From Bispira polyomma (Eukaryota): a stretch of DNA of 64,000 nucleotides. How positions within the stretch are numbered: the first letter of the stretch is position 1; each line of letters begins with the position of its first letter. The notes under the pieces were generated by a model, which was not told the origin of the DNA, ran no database searches, and worked only from the letters and a program-made list of their open reading frames with translations. Positions 13,068 through 31,500 of the stretch are shown here, piece after piece. Both the position numbers and the translations under genes were made by a program. Location of the stretch: contig OZ287753.1 in NCBI GenBank assembly GCA_965649765.1, forward strand, positions 19,220,001 to 19,284,000, written 5' to 3'.

Positions 13068-13584
13068 CTAAATTTCAGTAGCCTGCATGTCAAAGCCATT
13101 ATTATCATACAAACTGCCTCCAATAATCGACGGCTTTCCAGCATTGCTGATGTTTCTGTGCGAGTCGTCGCTATGACTTTTGCCGGCGTCGGCAGGGGTG
13201 CTCAGTTTGCCGTGTCGTCCAATACTGGCAAACCCATTCCTATTGCTAGCACTTCCCGCTTTACTGACACCGTTTGGCAAGGATTTACCATTTGGAGTTA
13301 AATGCGGTTTCTCCCTATTATCACTCGCACTGAGGTGATTCCCCACAAAGTCTGCACTATTGCTATCTGTATTATTTTGTTCTTTTATAGCAATGGGCTC
13401 TTCCTGTGCCTTGAGGGCAGCTCTCAGGTATTTATCGCGGTCTCTATTCCGGTTTCCTTGGCTACCGTTGTATCTATGGTACTGGTCAAACTCATCGTTA
13501 GGCATCTCCATACTCATTTCCTGTTCGTCATAGCCTTTGTCGGTATCATTAGGGGAGACAGTGTTCTCGTCCAGCGAGTTCTTA
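13068..13584 (-). CDS. Cadherin last coding exon (KNSLDENTV...MQATEI*), class I PDZ-binding end
   Basis: TAG acceptor, phase 2, in frame with ORF 13068-13517. Confidence 0.9.
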
Positions 13585-16500
13585 CTACAAGCAAACAGAT
13601 ATAACGATTGTGTGATTAAGTCAACAATGAACAGGCTTAAATGGTTAAAACAGGGGCCATATTGTTGAACAAATACTTAGCATAAACTCCTACTGAACTC
13701 AAAAAAAAATATATATATATTAGACTGTGTCAAAATCTGTGTAACATACATGGAAATAACCTATGCTTGTGACCATTCATTTTAATAGAGCTTTCAACAC
13801 TGAATTGAAATAGGAAGTCAGATTTGAGATATGTTTAGCCTACTGTATCCAAAGTTATAGAGAATCCTGATTTCAATTGAGTATGAGTTTAAGCTGGGTA
13901 TCTATCATTCGAGAATATGTCGTCCATTTTTTAATACAAGGAAATTTATATATCTAACAAATTGCCAAAAAATATACTAAAGGTTAAGATATCCAAGTAA
14001 ATCTAGAGGTTCAGCCGAATATTATTGAACACCGACAAACCTTTACTTGTCATAAAATTACAACTAAAATTCAATGTATCTTTGCCACTGTATTTGTAAA
14101 TGTGCTACAAAAACAGGACATTACAGTCAGAGCATATGAGTTAATACAGAATACAAAATTGTTATGTTCAATAAGGGATGTATACATTACTCAAAATTAT
14201 ATATATATAACTACAGTACTCTTAAATTAGAGGCAACATCTTCATTACGAGGCAAATGTTATATTCTGATAAAGAAGTACATTCAACTGCACATTATTAA
14301 TGTTTATGCTTAATTAAATGACTATATACCGGTAAGTAGATAAGGTACCATGAAACAATGAACTATAGCACTGCGTGAGTTTTTGTTTTTTTGATAATGC
14401 ATTTTCTGCTTGATGTATAAGCATTCTGTCATCCTAGCCCACACAAAAAAATTATTTAAGTCTTATAAAGGTTCAGAAACATAAACTTCATGGGTGCTAG
14501 CATTGATATAAAAGCTTCCTTGGAATATAAAATATTAAATCAAAATGAAACAGGGAACGTACATATAAATTTCTAGACAACTTTTGAAATTAGAAAAAGA
14601 TGTATCATGCAACTGATGTGTAGAAATAACTTTGAAAGGTGTGCATTATAAAAACCCATATATATATAGTTAATGAAATAACTTAAGCTTAAGACTAACT
14701 TAAGACCTTTTTTGAATACGGCCCCTGTGGTCTTTGTTTTGGGCTGAAAAGGTGAATATTTAGGTCTTTGTCCCAATGACAGTAAGATCTTTGCTTAGTG
14801 ATGACTTTGTGCTTTACACTGAGACTAACAGAAGCCTTTAATAACATTGTTATTGTTGTTGTGATATCCATCGTACAAGTTATTAGAATTTTATCAGAAT
14901 CGTATTATAACATCAAACCATACCATAGTGACCACAATCATAATCAAAGCAATTCCATCTTGTGCATTCAACATTAATGGTAAAAATATACCAAAACACC
15001 ACAAACATGTGTTGAAAAATGTGACAGGCACTTTGCACACCTGTAGCAGCGTACGTCCTATAACAGGTATTAGAATTAGGTCCCCATAAAAGGTCAGAGC
15101 CAATTTTTTTATTCATAGCTTCTTAAGTATTTATCTCTGAATTAATCTCTTGGAATTAAGCTCTTGGAAATCCCAGTGACATAATGTAATAGTAACCTTC
15201 ATCATCATCATGTGAGATTATTTAAATCGATTAAAAAATTAACCGTGAATGAGCAAGCTCTAGGTTAGAAATATATTCACAAAACATAACCACGCAAGTG
15301 TGACAGAAAAACAAAGATAAATAGTCAAGATAGCCAACTCAAACACTGGGAAAGTTTTCCACATCTAAGGTAATATAAACTACAAGTTTTGAAAAAAGGT
15401 AAACCAGAACAACAGTTGTGCATGTATTTTCAAACTAGAATACCATATATGGTTATTGATGGGTGGCGCTGCCATTTAGGTGTATATCTGATGCATCCAC
15501 ATGGTTTGATTGGCTGTTGTAGTTAACAGAAAACACAAAGACATCCACCATATTTATACATCCTTATTTAGGTTACTTTAATGAAATATCATTATTGTTG
15601 TATCAGTTTATCTTGACAAACATACCTTCTTCTTGAAAAATATTGTTTGTGCAAAAATTTAACTGATATTACTACTTAAAGATGCTACAATGACATGTGC
15701 ACTGAAATTGCAAAGTATTAAATTAACAATACTTTAACTCAGAAATGACACCTTTTGAAAATGTACTTTCAACAAAAATTAAATCTGAACAGCAACTGAA
15801 AACAGGGGTATAAACCTGATCATTTATCAATGTCCTCAAGATTCTTAAGCCTGTCACTGGGTGTAGAACTCAATAACATGGGATCCAACACCATAAGATA
15901 CGATTACAAGCCAATATATTATGCATATCTGCCTTTACCTGGGAGAGAACCCAAGTCATCTGTGTACTAAATTGAGTATGCCACCCATTTAACAATACAT
16001 GTATACGTTGTTGTCAGTCTAATAGATGCTTTAAAATATGATACTTTGTAACTATAACTCAACATGATACAAGATATACAATATGCACCTCTTACCTTTG
16101 GCGATTTGTAATCTATATCTATAACAGAAGGCTCTTATAATAAAAAGTGGTATTTAAAGGGAGATTACAAATTTGGAAGAAAGTATAGTCGGATTGAAAA
16201 TGTTAAATATTACGATAAAAGAAGTTAATTTTTTACTGTACATTTTATGAACAAGGCTTTACAACTGACAATATAAAGCTCCTCCTAACCCACCTGTCCG
16301 TGTCAGTTTCTCTAGGCCAGCCATTTTCATACTGTTCTAACCAGATAGGGTTGGACCTGAAGTGACAAAAATAACACAAAACTGTAGTTTGTTTATTAAA
16401 CACTAGCTGTTAAAAATGTTAAAAGTGATTAACTCAGTGTCTTTTTGTAATGCCTGCAATATGTGTGTTTGTTAATACTACTGAGAACACATACAATGTA

Positions 16501-19500: not shown

Positions 19501-22500
19501 TGCAAAGTTTTAGTATTGCAGCGCTCTCTGAAGCAAAAAGTTGAATGTATTATAAACAAAAACTACATTGGTCCTATTGGATGGGTGTTAACTAGGTACA
19601 TATTGAATTGGTTGTGAGACGACAATCATTATACATACACATATATATTACAAGGTAAGTATAAACAAGTACACCTAAGTTTTGACTACGGAAACTATAC
19701 TGTGGATGCCATGCTAACATAAAATCAACATGGGTTTACCCCTAGAGCTCTGTCAAGGCCTCATTAAAATAATGTTGTTGGTGGTTGCATGATTCGATTG
19801 GCTGCCTTGATGTCCCATGTGACATGTGATTTGCATAATGTATGGGAGGGCTGGACAAATCACTGGACAGGGTTGTGTATGACTTTGGGTCAGAAGACTG
19901 GATGAGGTTAAAGCTAAGGTCATTTCTACAGCTTAATGAAATAACAACACAAACAATGCAATCAGACTATACTGTATAAGCAGAAATTTTAGCTGCAATA
20001 AAATTCAACAATTTTAAGGAATTCATTAGGATCTTTATGTTTTACTTTTGGCCATTTTTTGGGGCTAGAAAAATAATATAAATTTACATTATTGATGAAA
20101 TAATGTTTAAATAAATTCCTTGGTGGAATTTCAACTCGATATACATGTTGTACAATTTTTTTTACAATATTTTGGAGGCAGTTAAAATGTGATTATGTTC
20201 GGATATGTATAAAGAAATATTGTTACAGATATATAGCATAGAAGAATTTTAAGCAACATTTATTGCAAGATAGATAACAAGAAATAACAATACATGTATA
20301 CATGAAAAAGGATTTATAAGAATGGCGGAAAAAAATTGAACATATTTTACAGATATACCAAGATACAGCATGTTTGATAACAATGACCTAGCGGAATATG
20401 TATATATGGACAAAAGACAGAATAACAATACTAATACTTAGAAAACAATTGCAGGAGATTATACAAAAAAAAATATTTAACAAGAAAATAGAAAAATTAG
20501 AAAGTATGTATTACATAGTAAAATCAAAGCCACAAACTAAATTTAAATAACGAAAAAAGTGTTTCCGTGAAGTTGATAAACAATATGAAGAGTAGCTAAA
20601 TACATACACAAGTACACAAGTATACATCACTCTTAAGAAGTATACATAAATATATGCCTGTGTTCCACTTACCCTTCATAGGAATGTTTATTTGTTCCTG
20701 GAACGCCATGGACGTGATTCAGGCCAGTGTCATGTGAACCTGTAACACAGGGAACCGCAACAATAATATATATGTGTACATCAATTGTGAAGTAACTCTG
20801 ACTCCCAGGTAAAAGTAATCAATATAACCCTGACTGAATAAACCCATGTATATAATTAATAAGTACAATAGTGTAATATTAGAAAGAAAGTTGGTTCTGC
20901 TTGGATTCGATCTCTGGATCTTATGGATCTTAAGATTATTAGTCACATGCTTAACAGTTGAGCTAAAGGAAAGACCCTCGGAAGCCTGAGTGTTTAATAC
21001 ACTTTAATAGCATTTCCTCTTCAGTCTAAATGGGAATATCTAGGATTACATATTCATTATTACTGAAAAATTTTTATCACTGCCCACTAAAAATCCTAAT
21101 GCTTTAAAATATATTGTCTGTTCAGATAACAAACAAACCATCACAAATGAGAATTAATTTTTAAGTATCTAATTTACCTAAAATTCATCCCCAAACATAT
21201 TTTTGAAGAAATAATATCAATGGTAGCACACATATGTAAGTACAATAATTGTAATTAGACTTTTATTGCGCTTAATCTCCCCTTAACAAAGGGGACTCTA
21301 AGGTGCACCAACACAAAAGACAGTTATCCAATTTCCAAAATCAAGGAACAGAAAAAGGGTCAGCAACATAGAGCGCGCTGGGGGATGATTGAGACTAAGG
21401 TGGATATGCTTTAGTGTACAAGTGGGTTTTAAGCTTCTTTCTAAAACAGGCTAGTGAGGGGGAAGCACGAATCACATCAGGAAGACCATTCCAAACAATG
21501 GGAGCATCAAAAGCAAACCTGTGACCAAACTGTTTAACCGACTTTTGAGTAGATGGGTGGAACTTCGGAACAACAAGGAAATTACTACCACTCTGACTAC
21601 GTCTGGTATTGTAGGAACTACTGTAAATGGAAAGATATGGGGCAAAATACTTTGGAAACCCAGTGTGGAGAAACTTATAAACAAGTGTAGCTGTCTTAAA
21701 CACTGAATGCTGTTCAACAGGGAGCCAATGCAATTTCTTAAGAACAGGAGTTATACTAGTGTATAATAATAATAATAATACTAGTGTATAATAATAACAA
21801 AAATTTTGCCAGAAATCAATCACTTCAATGGTCTTCTTTAAATTGTGATTTATTTAAAGTATCCACAGCGCCCATATCTAATAGTATACTATCAAAGTAT
21901 AGTTTCTCATTAGAACATATACACCACAAAAATAGAAGAAAGTAATGATGACAAAACCCCAAAAAAACTGATAATGCATGCTTGAAATAGACTTTAAGGG
22001 TCTGAAGGTCATATTCCTACTAGATATTTATGACAATTTTCTCACTGGAGTGGCACAATATTATTACTCCATGCAAAAAAACATTCTATAGAAGTGTAAT
22101 GTCTTCAAAAAATAAATTTGAGAGACTTTCAAGAACCAGAATTCTGGGCCACATCACAGTTCAGGGACAGAACAGAGTTTGTATCCAAATATGCCAGATA
22201 TATTTGGATCGAAGAAGGAATAAGGGTAGTACTGGGGTGGTATTTATAAACTATTTTAGCTTCAACCTGGTCTAAAATCTGAGTTTGTTATTTTGACCCC
22301 CAAAAAATTGATTTTGGTCTCAACCCTAGCTAGTCACATTAAGAAAAGATCTTAACTGAAGTGTTAATTTAGATCCAACAATCTGTCCCTTTTGGCGAGA
22401 TTCCTTGCTGTTATTTTGATGGCAGAAAAAATTACATGCAAAATGTCTCTGACATGCATACCACCACATGTAGGGCTCACAGTATTTGGTTAAACCACAG

Positions 22501-25500
22501 TCCAAGTAGAGATCAATTATGACGGTAATTTATATGCACAATATCGCTTGACCTAAGATTCATGAAGTGTTGTAATGTGTGAGAACTGAGAAGAGTTGTT
22601 GGTTAGCTAAAGATTTGGCAAATAAATTTTGAAAGAATTAAAACATCAATAGCACCATAACAACTTTGGACTGTTTTAAATAGTTAAGACATTCTCTCAA
22701 CACCCCCCTAATATTTGCACAAAGCTATAGGTAGTTCCCCATTTTCACACCATGCAAACAAGTCCATCACCCTTTATGAGTAATTATATATACCTATAGT
22801 GTAAATCTTCTGATTATCTGCACAAGAGAATGATCAATTTATACATATATTTAAATTGTGAATTTAAATAAATAAATAGTGAATAGTTTCAATCAAGTAG
22901 TAATGGTAGACCAGTCAAAATGACTAAGACTCACATGGTACACAAATTATGATGACATTATTATACATATTGTACACACATTATAATGACATCATATCAT
23001 ACATACTGTATGGTTATTATGATGAATTTATCAGTACATTATTGAGTCCCTTGAGAATTTCAATAAAAACAGTGTCTCAGACAGGTTTAAGCATATCACT
23101 GTCAATGTGATTTGACAATACATAAACAGTGATATTTGCTGATTCTGGAAAAAAAACATAGCAACAACATAACAACTAGAATATATAGTGACTGGTTAAA
23201 TTTCATTTGCAAACTTCAGCTTTGTATACACAACAATTGTACATTTTTTACTTCATCTATTGCTACATAAAATTACTTTGCAGCAGAAAATCACAGAAAT
23301 TCTTTTTGTCATAATCATAACTTACCAAAGGCCATGGCTGTGGCTGCTTTTAACTTTCTTTTGTACCTAAAAATACAGAAATAAACACAATAAACAATTA
23401 GAATTCCAGCTGTTTCTGTTAAATGATAAACATTTCATTGTAATCGAGAAAGTGTAATAAAATACAAACATTTGAATTAGCTTACTCTATGAAATGACTA
23501 GATTTGTTTTAGTATATTGAGCTTTTATAGTAAAGTAAAAATGGAAATTATCTTGAGATAATAAAAGAAAATCTACACATTTTACAATATATGGGATTAT
23601 CTGACTAATTTACTGTATGCAAAGCTTTGGAAATAATTATATATATATATTAATTTAGATAATTATATATATTAATTTATATCATAAAACAATGTTTGTA
23701 TTGGTGAGGATATAGATAGAACATAAACTACAGAAAGTCTTCTAGTACCATGGTTTTATCAAATAACATATTAATACAATCAAATATAAGTCTTGAAAAC
23801 TGCATCTGAAATGAGTGTTAGCAACCACACACAAAATAGTTAAAACAAACTTCAACATTTAAACCACATGTATAACTCAAACTCGGTTGGTAGTTGCAAT
23901 ATTCTAAAACAACAGCACCACAAATGTTGATTCACTGGAAACATAATTTGGATAATTATACAATTAAGTTAGTTTCCAAATCATCTGTTATTTGCAAGAA
24001 AACAAAAGATTTACGTCACATTTACAGCATTATATACACTATTATCTAAGAGCAGTAGTGATTTATAATTAAATAAATAGTCAGTATGTAACTTAAGGGC
24101 CTTACAGACCGCCGCCGACACAACACAACAATACAAAATAAAAATTGAAATAAAATAATAAAAACAGGTTATTCAGACTGTTCCCTACACGCCACTACAC
24201 CACACGACACTGCAATTTAACGTTGTGTCATTGGCTGTTTCTATATTGTTTGTGCTTTGGTGATGTATTGATCCATGTACTTTATATGAACTATGTAGTG
24301 TGTTGTCATGTTTGGTGTGTATATTACTGTCTGACAGTGACGTGTTGTTCCCTGAAGTGTAGTGTTGTGGGCGGTTTGTAAGACCCTTTAGGGTCTGGGA
24401 GACAATACTTTAGAATGCAAGCAATCTTTTGGAGGTTTTTGCCATTTGCATGGTTGTATAACCAATTTGCAGTCAACCATGACCTTTTGTTCAGGACTTT
24501 GTTTGGTGATCAGAAGGTCATACTGCCATAATGTTTACTGAGGGATAACATCCTTGGGCAAGATGTGAATATGCCATTGCTTACCGATGACAACTGGTGC
24601 TATTTGTTATAGAAGTATTCTTTTCTGGAGAACAAATACCTTAATTATAGGTTGAATTCATCCATTTGGACCTTAATAAATGCTTCAAATAAACAAAAGA
24701 TGGCCCTGGATGTTCTATATAGGTCCAATAGCTGTGTTAAAAAATGTGTTAAGAAATATTATTTGTTCTCCAAACACCATCACACTATAAAAAAATGTCA
24801 CACATCACTCGTAACTAGAGGTGGGACGGTACCGAAAATTGGCTCCCTGGAAACCGTTTAGTAGAATATATACTGCCCATAAAAAAATATACTCATTTGT
24901 AACTAATATGGAATATGCCTTCACACAGGAAATGAACAAGGAAAAATGAAAACACACATGTGCTTTCTTTATGGAATTGATTTTAAACACCAAGTATTAC
25001 AAATTGGTCCGACTAAAAACAATATTAATGATTAAATATGAATATGTGACAAAACTTTTTATTTATGAATACCAATCTTTCAAAATGTGGGTTTCTAAAT
25101 TTCATCACGATCAGCAACAAAAATTATACCGACCACGAGATATCGGTACAGTACCGTCTCACGCCTACATGTAACCTCTCTGTGGGCACTCACACATGCT
25201 GGCGTTTATAGTACACCACACAGGTGACCACAAATATGACTATTAGTAGCCCTACAATGGCCACCATTAAGTATAGAGATGATGACATGCTCCATCGGGT
25301 GACTTCTGCACTGGTGGAAATCGCCAGGCTTTGTGGCTACAAATACAGGCTCTCCATATTATACAATAGTGTTAATTAGCGAATATTATTGGACATGTAG
25401 TGATGCACAACACATGTAGTCCTAGGTATGGTATATAGGCAGGAATTACATGTATAAAGAACAGTTTGTCAGAAGGTCTGCATTACAGTGCTAAATAAAA

Positions 25501-28500
25501 TGTATATGTCGCACTAGACACGATGATTCTAAACAATCTCTGATCTCCCCCGGGAAAACTGTGATCAGAGTTGGATCTAGGAGAATATGAATTGTCCCAG
25601 GACAAACTCTGATTCTATTTGATTGAATTTTGTACCACTTTCCAGTCTATTAGTTGTGTTCAAAACTTTTGACAGCACTTGTATCTCACCAAAATGTGTA
25701 TTTATATTAACTAATATTTCTATTTCAAAACATTGAAAGCTTGAATTAGCATTTTCATGTGTAAAGCATCTTAATTGCGATGTTAAAAACGTTTAGACCG
25801 AAAATTGAATTGGCTGGATTTTGGTACGTTAACTATAAAAATTTTGAATTAGTTTCAAATCAAATGAGACTTTTTGACAAAATTGCACCATAAGCAATGA
25901 TTATGACAGACTACCATTGTCCCAGGAGGTCCATCAGGCACCAACCACTATTATATATATCTACAATTGTAAAAAACAGCAGTCATTAGAAAGAAAAGAA
26001 GAAAGCCTATAATTCAGTATCTTGTACATGGGTATGTTTAAGTTTTATAACTGTAGTCCAAAAAACAATCCAAACAGCAATGATCTGTATAAATATCACC
26101 ACACAGTTCTGATAATCTTACTAAAAGACTTGTTTTTATATACCATTCATTATCTTTGTGCTGCTCTAGAGCAATCAATTTCTAGAAATACTTTCTCCAA
26201 ACTGTTTTTGTGTCATAAGGTATTGTAATGCTGAATTATAGGCTTATTATACCACAAATATATGTCTGAACCAGGATTTATCACCAGTTGACATATTAAA
26301 ACTCCTTATTCAGAAGACAGAAGTTTGGATCAATGGCAATTCTGCTGTATGTGAAACATGACTTTTCTGTAAGGACAAAAAGAATACATTACTTTAAATA
26401 AACACATATTACGAAGATGTCAAGGTCACTTTTATCACAGTTTGATATTCCTACACCAATATGAACACCACAGGGATAAAAGTTTATATCATTGGGCTAT
26501 AATGATTTTAAAGATACAAATTGTGCTGAGGATTAAACCAATTAAATACAGTAGAACATCTGATCTGAATATTCCAATGTATACATGTGCTCTCTTCCTC
26601 CTAAATTTTACAGATTACATATTACAGAAAAACCTCTATTTACTGAGTTTCTATTATCCGAATATTGAATTTGATGAACACCTTATTGGTCTCACTAATT
26701 CACATTTTCATGTTACTAAAAGACCTCTTTTATTTGCTAAACCTTCTACCTTTTTTATCCGAACAAAAATCTTTAGATAAAAGAGACGCTACTGAAATAT
26801 TGTTGTAAACTCCTTCTTTCAAACTATCAATATTATCCAAAACTAAATACTTCTCCCTCTTGGTGTTCAGTTAATAGAGGTTCTGCTGTGTATTATTGTT
26901 TGATTTCATAAACATTGTACTTCCAAATCTATCATTATTATTCAAACTAAATGCTTTTTTTCCCACGGTGTTCGACTGTTCATATAATGGATATTCCTCA
27001 ATCCCAGTCTATCCTAAAGTGACCTTGACATCCTCTCGTACATCACTACTGTATATTGCCCACGCTAACTCCCAGCTGACTTACTTTTTACGACATGTCC
27101 AAGCTGTCACACAGATGACCACTATTAGTACAGCTAAAACAACAGCCACAGCAATCACACCAATCAGGATAGTTTTATCTACACGGCTCTCACTAACCTC
27201 CACCACTGCAGGCTAGAAGTATGTGATATGGTAGTATAGATATATTAGTTAAACAGTCCAATTGAACATTTTTATTTTTAGAGAGAGAAAAAGTATGGCA
27301 GATTAAACATTACTCGGACTCACCTCGTCCACCGCATGGTGTAATTAGGTGACATGGTAGTATAGAAATATATAGGCAAATCATGTACTATAAACATTAT
27401 TCTCACTCCACCGTGGGCTGAAATAGTGAGCTGATATATACAGTTTCATATCTTGCAAGTGCAATATCTTCCTAAAACCAAAAATTGTTAAGCAAAAATA
27501 AAAAATTGAGGGGTTAATAATCCAGACAGATGTGACTATGGGCAGGAGAGGCATTAAGTAGGGAAGGTTGATACAAATAGAGGACTTTTAAGGTGCTTTC
27601 TGAAGTAGGTAACAATTGGACTAGATCTAGTCTTAGAGGACATTTTGTAGGGCAGGTTAATGCAAATTGGTGACTTTTATAAGGAGGTTTCTGAAGTAGG
27701 TAACAGAGGGGCTGTAATATAAGAGGGAAAAGAATTCCAAAAAGAGGCAGCATAGTAGCTTAAACCACTTGGTGAAGCATTTATAAGACTTCTTGATGCT
27801 TCTATCAAACTTTGGAACCTTGGAATAGCCTCAAAACTAGTCTTTAGATACATGTTGTCCACTTAAAATCAAATACATATGTAATACTATAAATATTTTT
27901 AGGATTACACCAATTACTTCTGACATTAAACAAAAATAGAGTGAAGTGGCCCATGGGGGCCACATCAGCCAATGACTATCTTGGATTAATTTGTTAATAC
28001 TTTTTCAACAATTAGATTAAATTTATCATTTTATAACATCCTTTGATGTGAAAAAATACTGTTACAGTGTAACATAAAAACGTAATTAGCTGATATAATA
28101 CCATGATAATTAATTCATACATACCAAAACTTCCATCACATTGTATTTCTTGAACAAATCTTCGAGGTAGATGTAGTTTTTGTCTATCAGACTAGAAATA
28201 ACAAATATTTACTTGTTTATTTGTAGTGTACACTTTAGATTTCAGACACTTTAGAAATTAATTTTTTTAATTAAGACATTAAACCTGTATGTTAAAACTT
28301 ATTTTTTTTTAACATTTCACACATACAATGTTAAGTTTTTCCAATTCATTGTTGATTCTAGGATTTTTATACTTTTACTACAGGCACTTAGTAAAACTCT
28401 GTTGACAATAACTAGGTTACTAAAAGTGTGTTGAAATTACTAGCTATAAGTGTTAGGACTCTGTTGATAATATCTGGTATTTACTGAAAGTATTTTGACA

Positions 28501-31500
28501 CCACCCGGTACCTACTAAATGACTATTGACAAACTAAAGTCTGTTGAAAATACTTTCTAAGCTCTAAGAATCTGTTGCAATATCTGCCACTTATTAAATA
28601 TCTGTTGACAGTATTCAATACTTACTTAATACCTATTGACAGAACCTGGTATTCACTCAACCTCTGTTGATAAACCTGGTACTTACTCAAAGTCTGTGGA
28701 CACAATACATGGTACTTACTCAATTAAGACATCTGCAGGTACCACTTCTCCTGTCTTGTTATCTATACCATGAATAAACATGTCTGTCCTGAAGAGACAG
28801 AAAAGAGAAATACAACAAAAGTGCACACTTACTTAATAATTGGCAGTTTCTGGATGGTTTAACTAACAATAAGGTCAATGTTGTTAATTAAGTAGCATTG
28901 CCAGCTAACAGGGTAGATTTTAAAGAAAATGCGTTTTTAGACAATAGATTTTCCTCCACATAAAAAGAAAATTTAGGTAACAGAGTTCTACTTATTAAGG
29001 TTGGACTGTATATTTCATTTTACTGTTTTTTTAAAAAAAAAGAATTTTAAATAAACATGTATACCTCCTGGCATCCGGCTGGCCATTCTCATCTTTGTGT
29101 GGTAAAATCTCATCTACATTTATAATCAGCCCTGTCACATTGGTCAGAAACTCGGCAAAATGGTCTCGAAATTCATGGACGTCATCTGGTTCTCCCCGTA
29201 TAATGACCTTCACCCTCTGGTTCTCATTGAGAAAGTAAATCTGAAACAATATACACCAAAAACAATGTATTTTTCAAACATCTGAAATTTTTCTAAAACG
29301 GTTTGCAACTTTATCTGAATATGAAATATGAAACAAATTAACAAGTGAAAGTAGGGAGTTGCATTTATTATAGAGAGGATGTTATAATTTATGGTTAAAT
29401 TAAAATCTCAAATATATCGATCACCTAAATTACTGGTCCTTACCCTGAACTCTGATATGTACTGATATCTTACATACCATTCTTGTCTACAAAGACACAT
29501 AAATTACCTAGAAATCTAAGACATATTCATAGTATATCACTTAATCTCAAATTTATACATACAATAGGTGAACTACTGAGTGCTATTGGAACAACTGGGA
29601 TGAAAAATACAATTTACACAAAAAAATAATAAGGAATTGACCTCTAGACCAGAAGCTTTTAATTTTTTTCTTAATCTCCAAATAACTTTTGAGCTTTAGT
29701 ATACTCACAGAGACATCCGCAGTGTCTTCGTGTAGTGGGTTAATGTCAGTAACCTTGACCTTAAATTCAATATGTCCATCCATGTCATTGGCAAAATACA
29801 CGTGTGTCTTCACAATACCAGTGTTTTGGTCCACCAGAAATGGATCATCTTTAAACCTGTCCCTCAGGCCAGACGTGTACACAAAACCATCCTTCGCATA
29901 GTAAGAGAGCTTGCTATTGTTTCCTATGTCTGGATCTGTGGCATACAGCTGGAAATATTGTCAAAACAAATAATTGTAAGAAAAATAGAGTTATATCTGT
30001 GGTATAAGCTTCATACACCAGAAATTTTATCCCCACAAATAACAATAAGACAGATAGAGTTGATAAATGTTTGGGTTTGTGGAATACACCTGTTAAATTG
30101 TCCCCAAAAATACCAATCAGATAAAGTTAGATAGAGTAATACAGGATTATAAAACAGAACCTGGGGTTGTATTCACAAAAGGTCTTAGTCTTAACTTCGT
30201 CATAAGCTTTAGTTTTTAGTCTTTGATTTTTGCCGAAAAAGGTTAATATTTTGGTCTTAGTCATAGTTACAGTAAGAAAGTATCTTTGCTTAGTGTTATA
30301 TTTGCTCTTAACACTAAGACTAACATTAGTCTTCAATATTTTATACATAAATGTTACGCTTAAAACTAAGTTAAGACTACGAGCTTTTGTGAATATGGCC
30401 CCAGAATTTTAGATCTATACAATGAAATGTGTAGAAGATAAAGGTTTTTTATTTTAAAATCTACCATGTTAAGTGGAAGTCCTACTTATGTAGACATTTA
30501 GAAGTATTCTTGAGACCAAGCTATGTACCAGGGGCTGTATTCACAAAGGTTCTTATTCTTGGAATTGCAGTTATTCTTAAAATTTTCTTAGAATTTTTCT
30601 TGGACTAAGAAAATTCTAAGAAAAATTCTAAGAATAACAATTTTCAAATTTGTTTTATTCCTATTCTTAGATCTTTTGAAGAAAAATTTGAATGACTATA
30701 TACTATAACAATGGTACAAAAATTGGCAACTTTGTGGGTACTAATTCTTTGAAAAATATCTAAGAATAAAAAACACTAAGACAGATTAATACTGGTGGTC
30801 CTCTGTCATTGGGTCCTATGCCCAGTGGCAAGTTAAAGAATCTTGGGGATGTTTAAAAATGGTGTCATCCACAACTGTTTCATGTTCGGGGAATAATAGT
30901 TGCTAGCTGGTGCTTAATTTTTTGCTACACTTGTAAAAGGTTAATTAACCCTTCAAATACCAGCTACAGGAAGATAAATGTGCTTACATGGATTTGTTTG
31001 AATATATAACTACTTACAGAGAGGTCAATGACCTCTGTACCAGGCTGGGTGTCCTTAGTAACCCCTGCTGTAAACCACTTCTTTAAGAACTTAGGTGGGT
31101 TGTCATTGATGTCTAATATCTCCACTTGGACTAGGAGCAGTGAGGTGTCACTCTCATTCCACGATTCGTCCATGTTTTCTTCCTTCTCCCAGTAGCCTGA
31201 AGTTATATTTATTCTAGATATAAGCTACAATCTAGTCATGCAATGTTATAAAAGAATGTATTACACTTCCCGATAATTGCAATACAAAGCATTCTTTTAT
31301 AACATTGCACAACTGTGAAAAGCTTATCTCAATTCTAACATGACTGCAGCATTAATTTTAATAATTAAAATCATATCACTACACATATTAATTTTATATG
31401 CCAATCGGAGTGCTGTATAATTATCTTAAATATAATGTCATCATGTTAGAATAAGATTTATTTTAATGTTGTTTTCAACAATTATTTGTTATATATCATG

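What the first reader, a model, noticed from the sequence alone, without database searches (positions are those of the whole stretch)
25194..27212. Two mutually exclusive transmembrane exons in a Cad87A/CDH23-like cadherin
Seen: between the exon ending MEVL (phase 0) and the exon starting YKRKLK (phase 2) are two stop-free exons, 27085-27212 and 25194-25336. Each has strong splice sites, phase 0-2, an initial Pro, a stalk, a ~23-aa hydrophobic helix and basic residues. Including both, or neither, shifts the frame, so only one can be used. Their sequences are highly diverged, implying an old duplication kept by selection. Known: alternative TM exons occur in Drosophila Dscam1 (exon 17, affecting localisation) and N-cadherin. 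Inference: a similar TM switch may control targeting or shedding of this cadherin; I do not recall it being described for this family. Neither exon appears in the ORF track.
Basis: partly seen in the sequence, partly recalled or inferred. Interest (0 to 1): 0.85.

Follow-up and report, generated by a model that had tools for sequence, protein, structure and literature searches.

The report
Two alternative membrane anchors, worm cadherin-23
A worm-like invertebrate's cadherin-23-type adhesion gene has two different, well-preserved exons for its membrane anchor, and each mRNA can use only one; the same trick is known from fly Dscam and N-cadherin, I found no report of it in this family, and there is no RNA proof yet.

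Summary
Exons A (27212-27085, 128 nt) and B (25336-25194, 143 nt) are phase 0-2, stop-free and the two most hydrophobic candidates in the window. Either one alone keeps the frame; both or neither give a premature stop. The gene is a cadherin-23/Cad87A-type cadherin of a non-mollusc lophotrochozoan, probably an annelid.

One related genome (L003; introns unalignable, dS about 0.8) keeps both exons in order and frame. dN/dS is 0.20 for A and 0.29 for B, so B is under selection. Nine more distant loci have a single A-like exon, so B is a lineage-restricted addition, probably an old duplicate of A.

New here: both species have AATAAA at +131 after B's donor, and read-through gives V-stop. B may therefore also, or only, end a tail-less isoform. 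A predicted pairing across the A-B intron is strong in the window and weak in L003.

No RNA data exist here, so use of either junction is unproven. The scan noted other duplicated-exon pairs in this genome, none of this kind. Verdict: a real new member of a known kind (Dscam exon 17, N-cadherin exon 18).

The parts
29065..29240 (-). First membrane-adjacent-domain exon (family marker)
   Evidence: a profile of this exon hits only Cadherin-23 (8TRI) significantly in PDB, E 2.8e-14
28125..28191 (-). Upstream constitutive exon U, ends MEVL, phase 0
   Evidence: 95% identical in L003
27291..27380 (-). Decayed partial tandem copy of exon A's acceptor and first about 55 nt; a similar relic lies upstream of A in L003
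   Evidence: local score 75 vs null 27.6 (window) and 96.5 vs 28.2 (L003), 0 of 1000 shuffles each
27085..27212 (-). TM exon A (128 nt, phase 0-2): acidic stalk, TM helix, Cys plus basic residues; orthologue of the single TM exon of outgroups
27036..27070 (-). 5' arm of a predicted pairing across the A-B intron (+15 to +49)
   Evidence: computed only, weak in L003
26414..27035 (.). Foldback (MITE-like) repeat inside the A-B intron; not in L003; probably incidental
   Evidence: multi-copy read depth in parts
25375..25411 (-). 3' arm of the predicted pairing, overlapping B's likely branch-point region (-75 to -39)
   Evidence: branch point inferred from a CTAAT motif, not mapped
25194..25336 (-). 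TM exon B (143 nt, phase 0-2): Ser/Thr-rich stalk, TM helix, YYKR; lineage-restricted
   Evidence: 146 nt and 60% aa identity in L003
25058..25063 (-). AATAAA at +131 after B's donor, same position in L003: candidate intronic poly(A) signal
   Evidence: chance of a matched AWTAAA in shuffles 0.03
23326..23366 (-). Downstream constitutive exon D (YKRKLKAATAMAF), phase 2 start
   Evidence: 100% identical in L003
22794..22817 (-). Conserved 24-nt candidate microexon in the cytoplasmic tail, with downstream TGCATG
20673..20739 (-). Tail exon E with the PGTNKHSYE motif
16294..16356 (-). Tail exon F (SNPIW...)
13068..13584 (-). Last coding exon, ends in ATEI-stop (PDZ-binding-like, by inspection)

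Best explanation
A CDH23/Cad87A-type cadherin gene has a pair of mutually exclusive cassette exons, each coding the whole stalk + TM helix + inner basic residues. A is the ancestral exon. B arose later in one lineage, most likely by tandem duplication of A, and diverged. Transcripts go U-A-D or U-B-D, so the ectodomain and tail are the same and the anchor differs: an acidic stalk and juxtamembrane Cys (A), or a Ser/Thr-rich stalk and YYKR (B). Double inclusion and double skipping make premature stops well upstream of the last junction and would be removed by NMD. A pairing between the start of the A-B intron and B's branch-point region may additionally block A-B joining. Some B transcripts may stop at the +131 poly(A) signal and give a tail-less form (about 40% likely as an extra use). 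SHOWN: anatomy, frames, conservation and selection in two species, single exon in outgroups. INFERRED: actual splicing, NMD, the RNA pairing, duplication origin, and an effect on sorting, lipid partitioning, cis partners or shedding (by analogy with Dscam TM1/TM2).
For: Frame logic in both species. L003 has both exons in order with AG/GT kept; B differs by one whole codon, while flanking constitutive introns are unalignable. dN/dS is 0.20 (A) and 0.29 (B), Fisher p 2e-4 and 6e-4; in 20,000 neutral simulations at distance 0.81 none reached B's observed identity and 0.005% stayed open, spliceable and hydrophobic. B's donor is GTGAGT in phase 2 in both species, in register with A's donor and its Cys. 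Intron flanks next to A and B are conserved (z 4.8 and 3.9), unlike constitutive flanks. Nine outgroup loci have one TM exon; the eight scored or aligned resemble A more than B or hit A only. The A-B intron gives the lowest end-to-end duplex energy of six introns in both species.
Against: No RNA run holds the stretch, and no transcript-derived protein with B was found. Only one second species. A-B homology is not detectable at protein level. The conserved AATAAA after B fits a terminal exon. The intron pairing is not significant in L003 (z +0.4 to -1.8), and the register-matched test is post hoc, p about 0.06.
Confidence: 0.74

Rival explanations
1. B is an alternative last exon only. U splices to B, translation reads through the GTGAGT to V-stop, and the RNA is cleaved after the +131 AATAAA. 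This gives a membrane-bound cadherin with no cytoplasmic tail (a decoy or dominant-negative form) instead of a TM swap.
For: AATAAA at +131 in both species, in the best-conserved block downstream of B (68% identity); matched-signal chance 0.03; the 170 nt after B are conserved at z 3.9. Read-through ends HV-stop and QV-stop. B carries its own YYKR stop-transfer.
Against: The stop is an automatic result of any phase-2 GTGAG donor (A has one too). The full donor consensus is kept in both species, including three positions that a terminal exon would not constrain, and it lies in register with A's donor and in D's phase. The poly(A) test was made after the motif was seen, in AT-rich DNA.
Confidence: 0.17
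2. B is a poison exon. It is included together with A to send the transcript to NMD, and its protein is not made.
For: A+B gives a premature stop in both species; the flanks are conserved.
Against: Selection acts on B's phase-0 amino-acid sequence (pN 0.28 vs pS 0.60) and keeps a TM helix. The A+B frame product is not conserved (23 residues vs 4 before the stop).
Confidence: 0.04
3. B is a decaying duplicate or a chance hydrophobic stretch.
For: This locus throws off dead partial copies of exon A, and AT-rich introns give chance hydrophobic frames (for example in L022).
Against: B is conserved at 60% aa identity with both splice sites across dS 0.8-1.2, far outside neutral simulation.
Confidence: 0.03

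Closest known systems
Drosophila Dscam1 exons 17.1/17.2
   Same: Two mutually exclusive exons, each coding the TM and juxtamembrane part of a single-pass adhesion molecule; TM1 is dendritic, TM2 dendritic and axonal (PMC7685093, PMC8787164).
   Different: Ig-superfamily gene, insect-wide, intron of 252 bp, shown by cDNA and genetics. Here: a cadherin, a lineage-restricted pair, intron of 754-1748 nt, no RNA evidence. The steric-hindrance-plus-structure paper (Yue et al. 2013, cited in PMC7685093) was not readable here; I rely on its title only.
Arthropod N-cadherin ME-18a/18b
   Same: Mutually exclusive exon pair including the TM of a cadherin, conserved between species (PMC2655722).
   Different: Classical-type cadherin; 68-70 aa exons, longer than the 42-48 aa here; no localisation difference between isoforms was seen in vivo, only graded adhesion in S2 cells (PMC2655722). 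Independent origin: different family, and outgroups here have one exon.
Vertebrate CDH23 isoforms (v1-v3, exon 68)
   Same: Same family by membrane-adjacent domain and tail motif; alternative splicing near the membrane.
   Different: The described variants use alternative promoters and skip cytoplasmic exon 68 (PMC2743805, PMC10018040); the passages read mention no alternative TM exon. Vertebrate CDH23 has 27 EC repeats; the closest full-length invertebrate relatives are about 1900 aa. The 24-nt tail microexon here is the nearer analogue of exon 68.
Tandem exon duplication substitutions in general (for example the NECTIN2 C-terminal swap)
   Same: Duplicated exons used as substitutes; enriched in membrane proteins (PMC9741552, PMC8373072). 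NECTIN2 is the model for the terminal-exon rival.
   Different: Here both copies may feed the same tail, and homology between the copies has nearly vanished.

Membership tests
CDH23/Cad87A-type cadherins | Tandem cadherin repeats | tested here: met
   Pfam PF00028 on several exons; collinear tblastn with the Tubulanus cadherin-23-like protein from residue 87 to 1868
CDH23/Cad87A-type cadherins | CDH23-type membrane-adjacent domain | tested here: met
   Only significant PDB hit is Cadherin-23 8TRI, E 2.8e-14; named hits are cadherin-23(-like)
CDH23/Cad87A-type cadherins | Tail motif of the PxTNxHxxEGSNPxW type | tested here: met
   Exons E and F match relatives, including vertebrate-like rows P0013 and P0026
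CDH23/Cad87A-type cadherins | One-to-one orthology with vertebrate CDH23 or fly Cad87A | tested here: inconclusive
   The tree has no paralogue outgroups (Cad88C, Cad74A, CDHR1); single copy in own genome; fly candidates for CDH23 are several and low-scoring (PMC10898740)
Vertebrate tip-link CDH23 | 27 EC repeats and a PCDH15-binding tip | tested here: not met
   Collinear with about 1900-aa relatives against 3354 aa for mouse (PMC2743805); the N-terminal 86 residues were not located
Mutually exclusive exon pair | Adjacent exons, same phases, similar length, interchangeable in frame | tested here: met
   (both species)
Mutually exclusive exon pair | Both under purifying selection | tested here: met
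Mutually exclusive exon pair | Sequence homology between the two exons | tested here: inconclusive
   None by BLASTP or hhalign; weak DNA similarity and shared register
Mutually exclusive exon pair | Transcripts with each exon alone, spliced on both sides | not testable with these tools
   No RNA run
RNA-structure-controlled exclusion (Dscam type) | Conserved pairing with compensatory changes | tested here: inconclusive
   Window z -3.9; L003 not significant; register-matched helix p about 0.06
Composite or alternative terminal exon | Poly(A) signal after the donor and 3'-end reads | tested here: inconclusive
   Signal conserved at +131; no 3'-end data

The most novel reading that the evidence does not exclude
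One newly gained exon gives this cadherin-23-type gene a three-way switch at the membrane: anchor A with tail, anchor B with tail, and anchor B without tail through intronic polyadenylation. A long-range RNA pairing that hides B's branch point enforces the A/B choice.
Probability: 0.2. Interest if true: 0.68.

Novelty: new member of a known kind. Interest (0 to 1): 0.47.

Why it matters
It would be a further independent origin of an either-or membrane anchor in a cell-adhesion molecule, after Dscam1 and arthropod N-cadherin. It would also be the first I could find in the cadherin-23 family, whose vertebrate member anchors the hearing tip link. Outgroups have a single exon, so the gain can be dated and the two anchors compared against an ancestral state. 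That is a natural test of whether the stalk and TM alone set localisation, shedding or partner choice. If B also ends a tail-less form, the gene makes its own decoy. The general phenomenon is well known, the pair is confined to a narrow clade so far, and expression is unproven, which keeps the score moderate.

Tried and rejected
RNA evidence: the run search gave three holders, all DNA-like contigs with no splice joints among the joints listed.

Exon B in protein databases: a two-sequence profile found nothing. Pfam gave only weak generic TM hits. There is no second copy of A, B or the family-marker exon elsewhere in the genome.

A third species with B: none among the loci from the 50% and 90% protein searches, the metagenome scan and twelve contig look-ups. 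The Owenia locus was withheld and the Lineus gene was not on record. A second hydrophobic frame in L022 was rejected: its helix sits at the exon start, with no stalk and no basic end.

Mechanisms rejected: simple steric exclusion (the intron is 754-1748 nt and AG dinucleotides lie close upstream of B); docking-site/selector pairs shared by both species (none found); the long foldback in the A-B intron (a repeat absent from L003). The whole L003 intron folds no better than shuffles.

Literature: ten searches found no alternative TM exon for Cad87A/CDH23; the library lacks most subscription papers.

Exons were joined only inside local scripts, for frame checks and one tree. No structure prediction was run.

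Full report
OBSERVATION. On the minus strand, exon U (28191-28125) ends MEVL in phase 0 and exon D (23366-23326) starts in phase 2 with YKRKLK. Between them lie A (27212-27085, 128 nt, donor GTAAGT) and B (25336-25194, 143 nt, donor GTGAGT). Both are open, start with Pro and carry a hydrophobic helix (19-residue means 3.59 and 3.27). A scan of both strands of the window for open 3n+2 AG-GT stretches gave eight candidates, and the six others score 2.43 or less. U-A-D and U-B-D read to the natural stop. U-A-B-D stops 244 nt and U-D 120 nt before the last junction. Contigs from three DNA runs cover both exons without differences. The donors are strong; the acceptors are weaker than most constitutive ones.

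THE GENE. Several exons are Pfam cadherin repeats. The first membrane-adjacent exon finds proteins named cadherin-23(-like) in nemerteans, annelids, brachiopods, molluscs and arthropods. Its profile hits only Cadherin-23 (8TRI) significantly among solved structures, E 2.8e-14. The window is collinear with the 1906-aa Tubulanus protein, and the tail has the family's PGTN...EGSNPIW motif. A tree of the juxtamembrane exons puts the gene outside molluscs and arthropods, among poorly resolved lophotrochozoan rows. An annelid is my inference. Strict orthology to fly Cad87A or vertebrate CDH23 was not established.

CONSERVATION. Locus L003 (ENA ERZ22147071) is the one close relative found. It has A (128 nt, 81% aa identity) and B (146 nt, 60%) in the same order and phases, with AG and GTAAGT/GTGAGT kept. 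The constitutive introns cannot be aligned. Pooled dS of constitutive exons is 0.81. dN/dS is 0.20 for A and 0.29 for B (Fisher p 2e-4 and 6e-4). In 20,000 neutral simulations none reached B's identity, and 0.005% stayed spliceable, open and hydrophobic. B is therefore selected as protein in its phase-0 frame.

ORIGIN. Nine more distant loci (L002 Tubulanus, L026 Lingula, L004, L005, L011, L022, L024, L025, L031) have one TM exon between U and D, mostly in gaps of only 270-570 nt. The eight that were scored or aligned resemble A more than B, or hit A only. Annotated isoform sets of Lineus, Ruditapes, Mercenaria and spiders all share one TM. So A is ancestral and B is a gain in the lineage of the window and L003. 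BLASTP and hhalign see no A-B similarity beyond a generic helix. However, both have the same phases, an initial Pro and a Cys nine codons before the donor, and DNA similarity is weakly above codon-shuffled controls (p 0.007 for the window pair, 0.01-0.2 for the others). Both species also carry a dead partial copy of A's acceptor and start just upstream of A (0 of 1000 shuffles), so tandem copying happens at this exon. Duplication is the likely origin but is not proven.

HOW THE CHOICE MAY BE ENFORCED. Frame plus NMD is sufficient in principle (inferred). In the window, the start of the A-B intron (+15 to +49) pairs with -75 to -39 upstream of B, covering the likely branch point: z -3.9, the strongest of 13 window introns tested. 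Both arms lie in single-copy DNA by read depth. L003 has a helix in about the same register (+21 with -60) and again the lowest duplex energy of its six introns. But it is not significant against its own shuffles, and the register test gives p about 0.06 post hoc. I treat it as a lead, about one chance in three.

The 170 nt after B's donor are conserved (z 3.9), and both species have AATAAA at exactly +131 (window 25063-25058), in the best-conserved block. Shuffles give a matched signal 3% of the time. Reading through B's donor gives V-stop in both species. B could thus end a tail-less isoform. Against terminal-only use: the stop is built into any phase-2 GTGAG donor; the whole donor consensus is kept in both species; and it stands in register with A's donor and in D's phase.

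FUNCTION. A has an acidic stalk and a Cys next to the inner basic residues, as most outgroups do; this is a possible palmitoylation site (own knowledge). B has a longer Ser/Thr-rich stalk and YYKR. A difference in sorting, glycosylation, shedding or cis partners is the likeliest purpose, by analogy with Dscam TM1/TM2, which differ in dendrite and axon localisation (PMC7685093). The analogy has limits: N-cadherin 18a/18b showed no localisation difference in vivo (PMC2655722).

WHAT IS KNOWN. Either-or TM exons are established for Dscam1 and arthropod N-cadherin, and tandem exon substitutions are enriched in membrane proteins (PMC9741552). The CDH23 variants I could read about concern promoters and cytoplasmic exon 68 (PMC2743805, PMC10018040). 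Ten literature searches found no alternative TM exon in this family; the library is incomplete. Other readers of this scan noted duplicated-exon pairs in netrin, L1-CAM, SLC44 and other genes of the same genome (unchecked), and none for a cadherin TM.

LIMITS. There is no RNA run for this organism and only one second species. The Owenia locus was withheld.

VERDICT. A real, selected pair of alternative membrane-anchor exons in a cadherin-23-type gene; new member of a known kind; interest 0.47.

Noticed in passing
window 22817-22794 (-); L003 16213-16236: Conserved 24-nt phase 1-1 candidate microexon (DNQKIYTI) in the tail, with a conserved downstream TGCATG (Rbfox-type motif) and about 120 nt of conserved flank. 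Bivalve isoforms have optional inserts at the same junction, and L011 has a 30-nt candidate with TGCATG there. Read-through stops at the same codon in both species.
   Followed up: partly
window 27380-27291 (-); L003 about 13390-13495: Dead partial copy of exon A's acceptor and start in both species. By eye each resembles its own species' exon A more, suggesting repeated duplication or gene conversion.
   Followed up: partly
window about 33370-32930, 32410-32230, 38620-38400, 41345-41040 (-): Tandem degenerate repeats of exon ends running into introns at several cadherin exons; exon-end duplication looks frequent in this genome.
   Followed up: no
window 27035-26414: Foldback element with 20-bp terminal arms (MITE-like) inside the A-B intron; parts are multi-copy.
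   Followed up: partly
   Followed up: no
window 21395-21823 (-): ORF resembling, by inspection, the C-terminal end of a LINE reverse transcriptase, inside the D-E intron.
   Followed up: no
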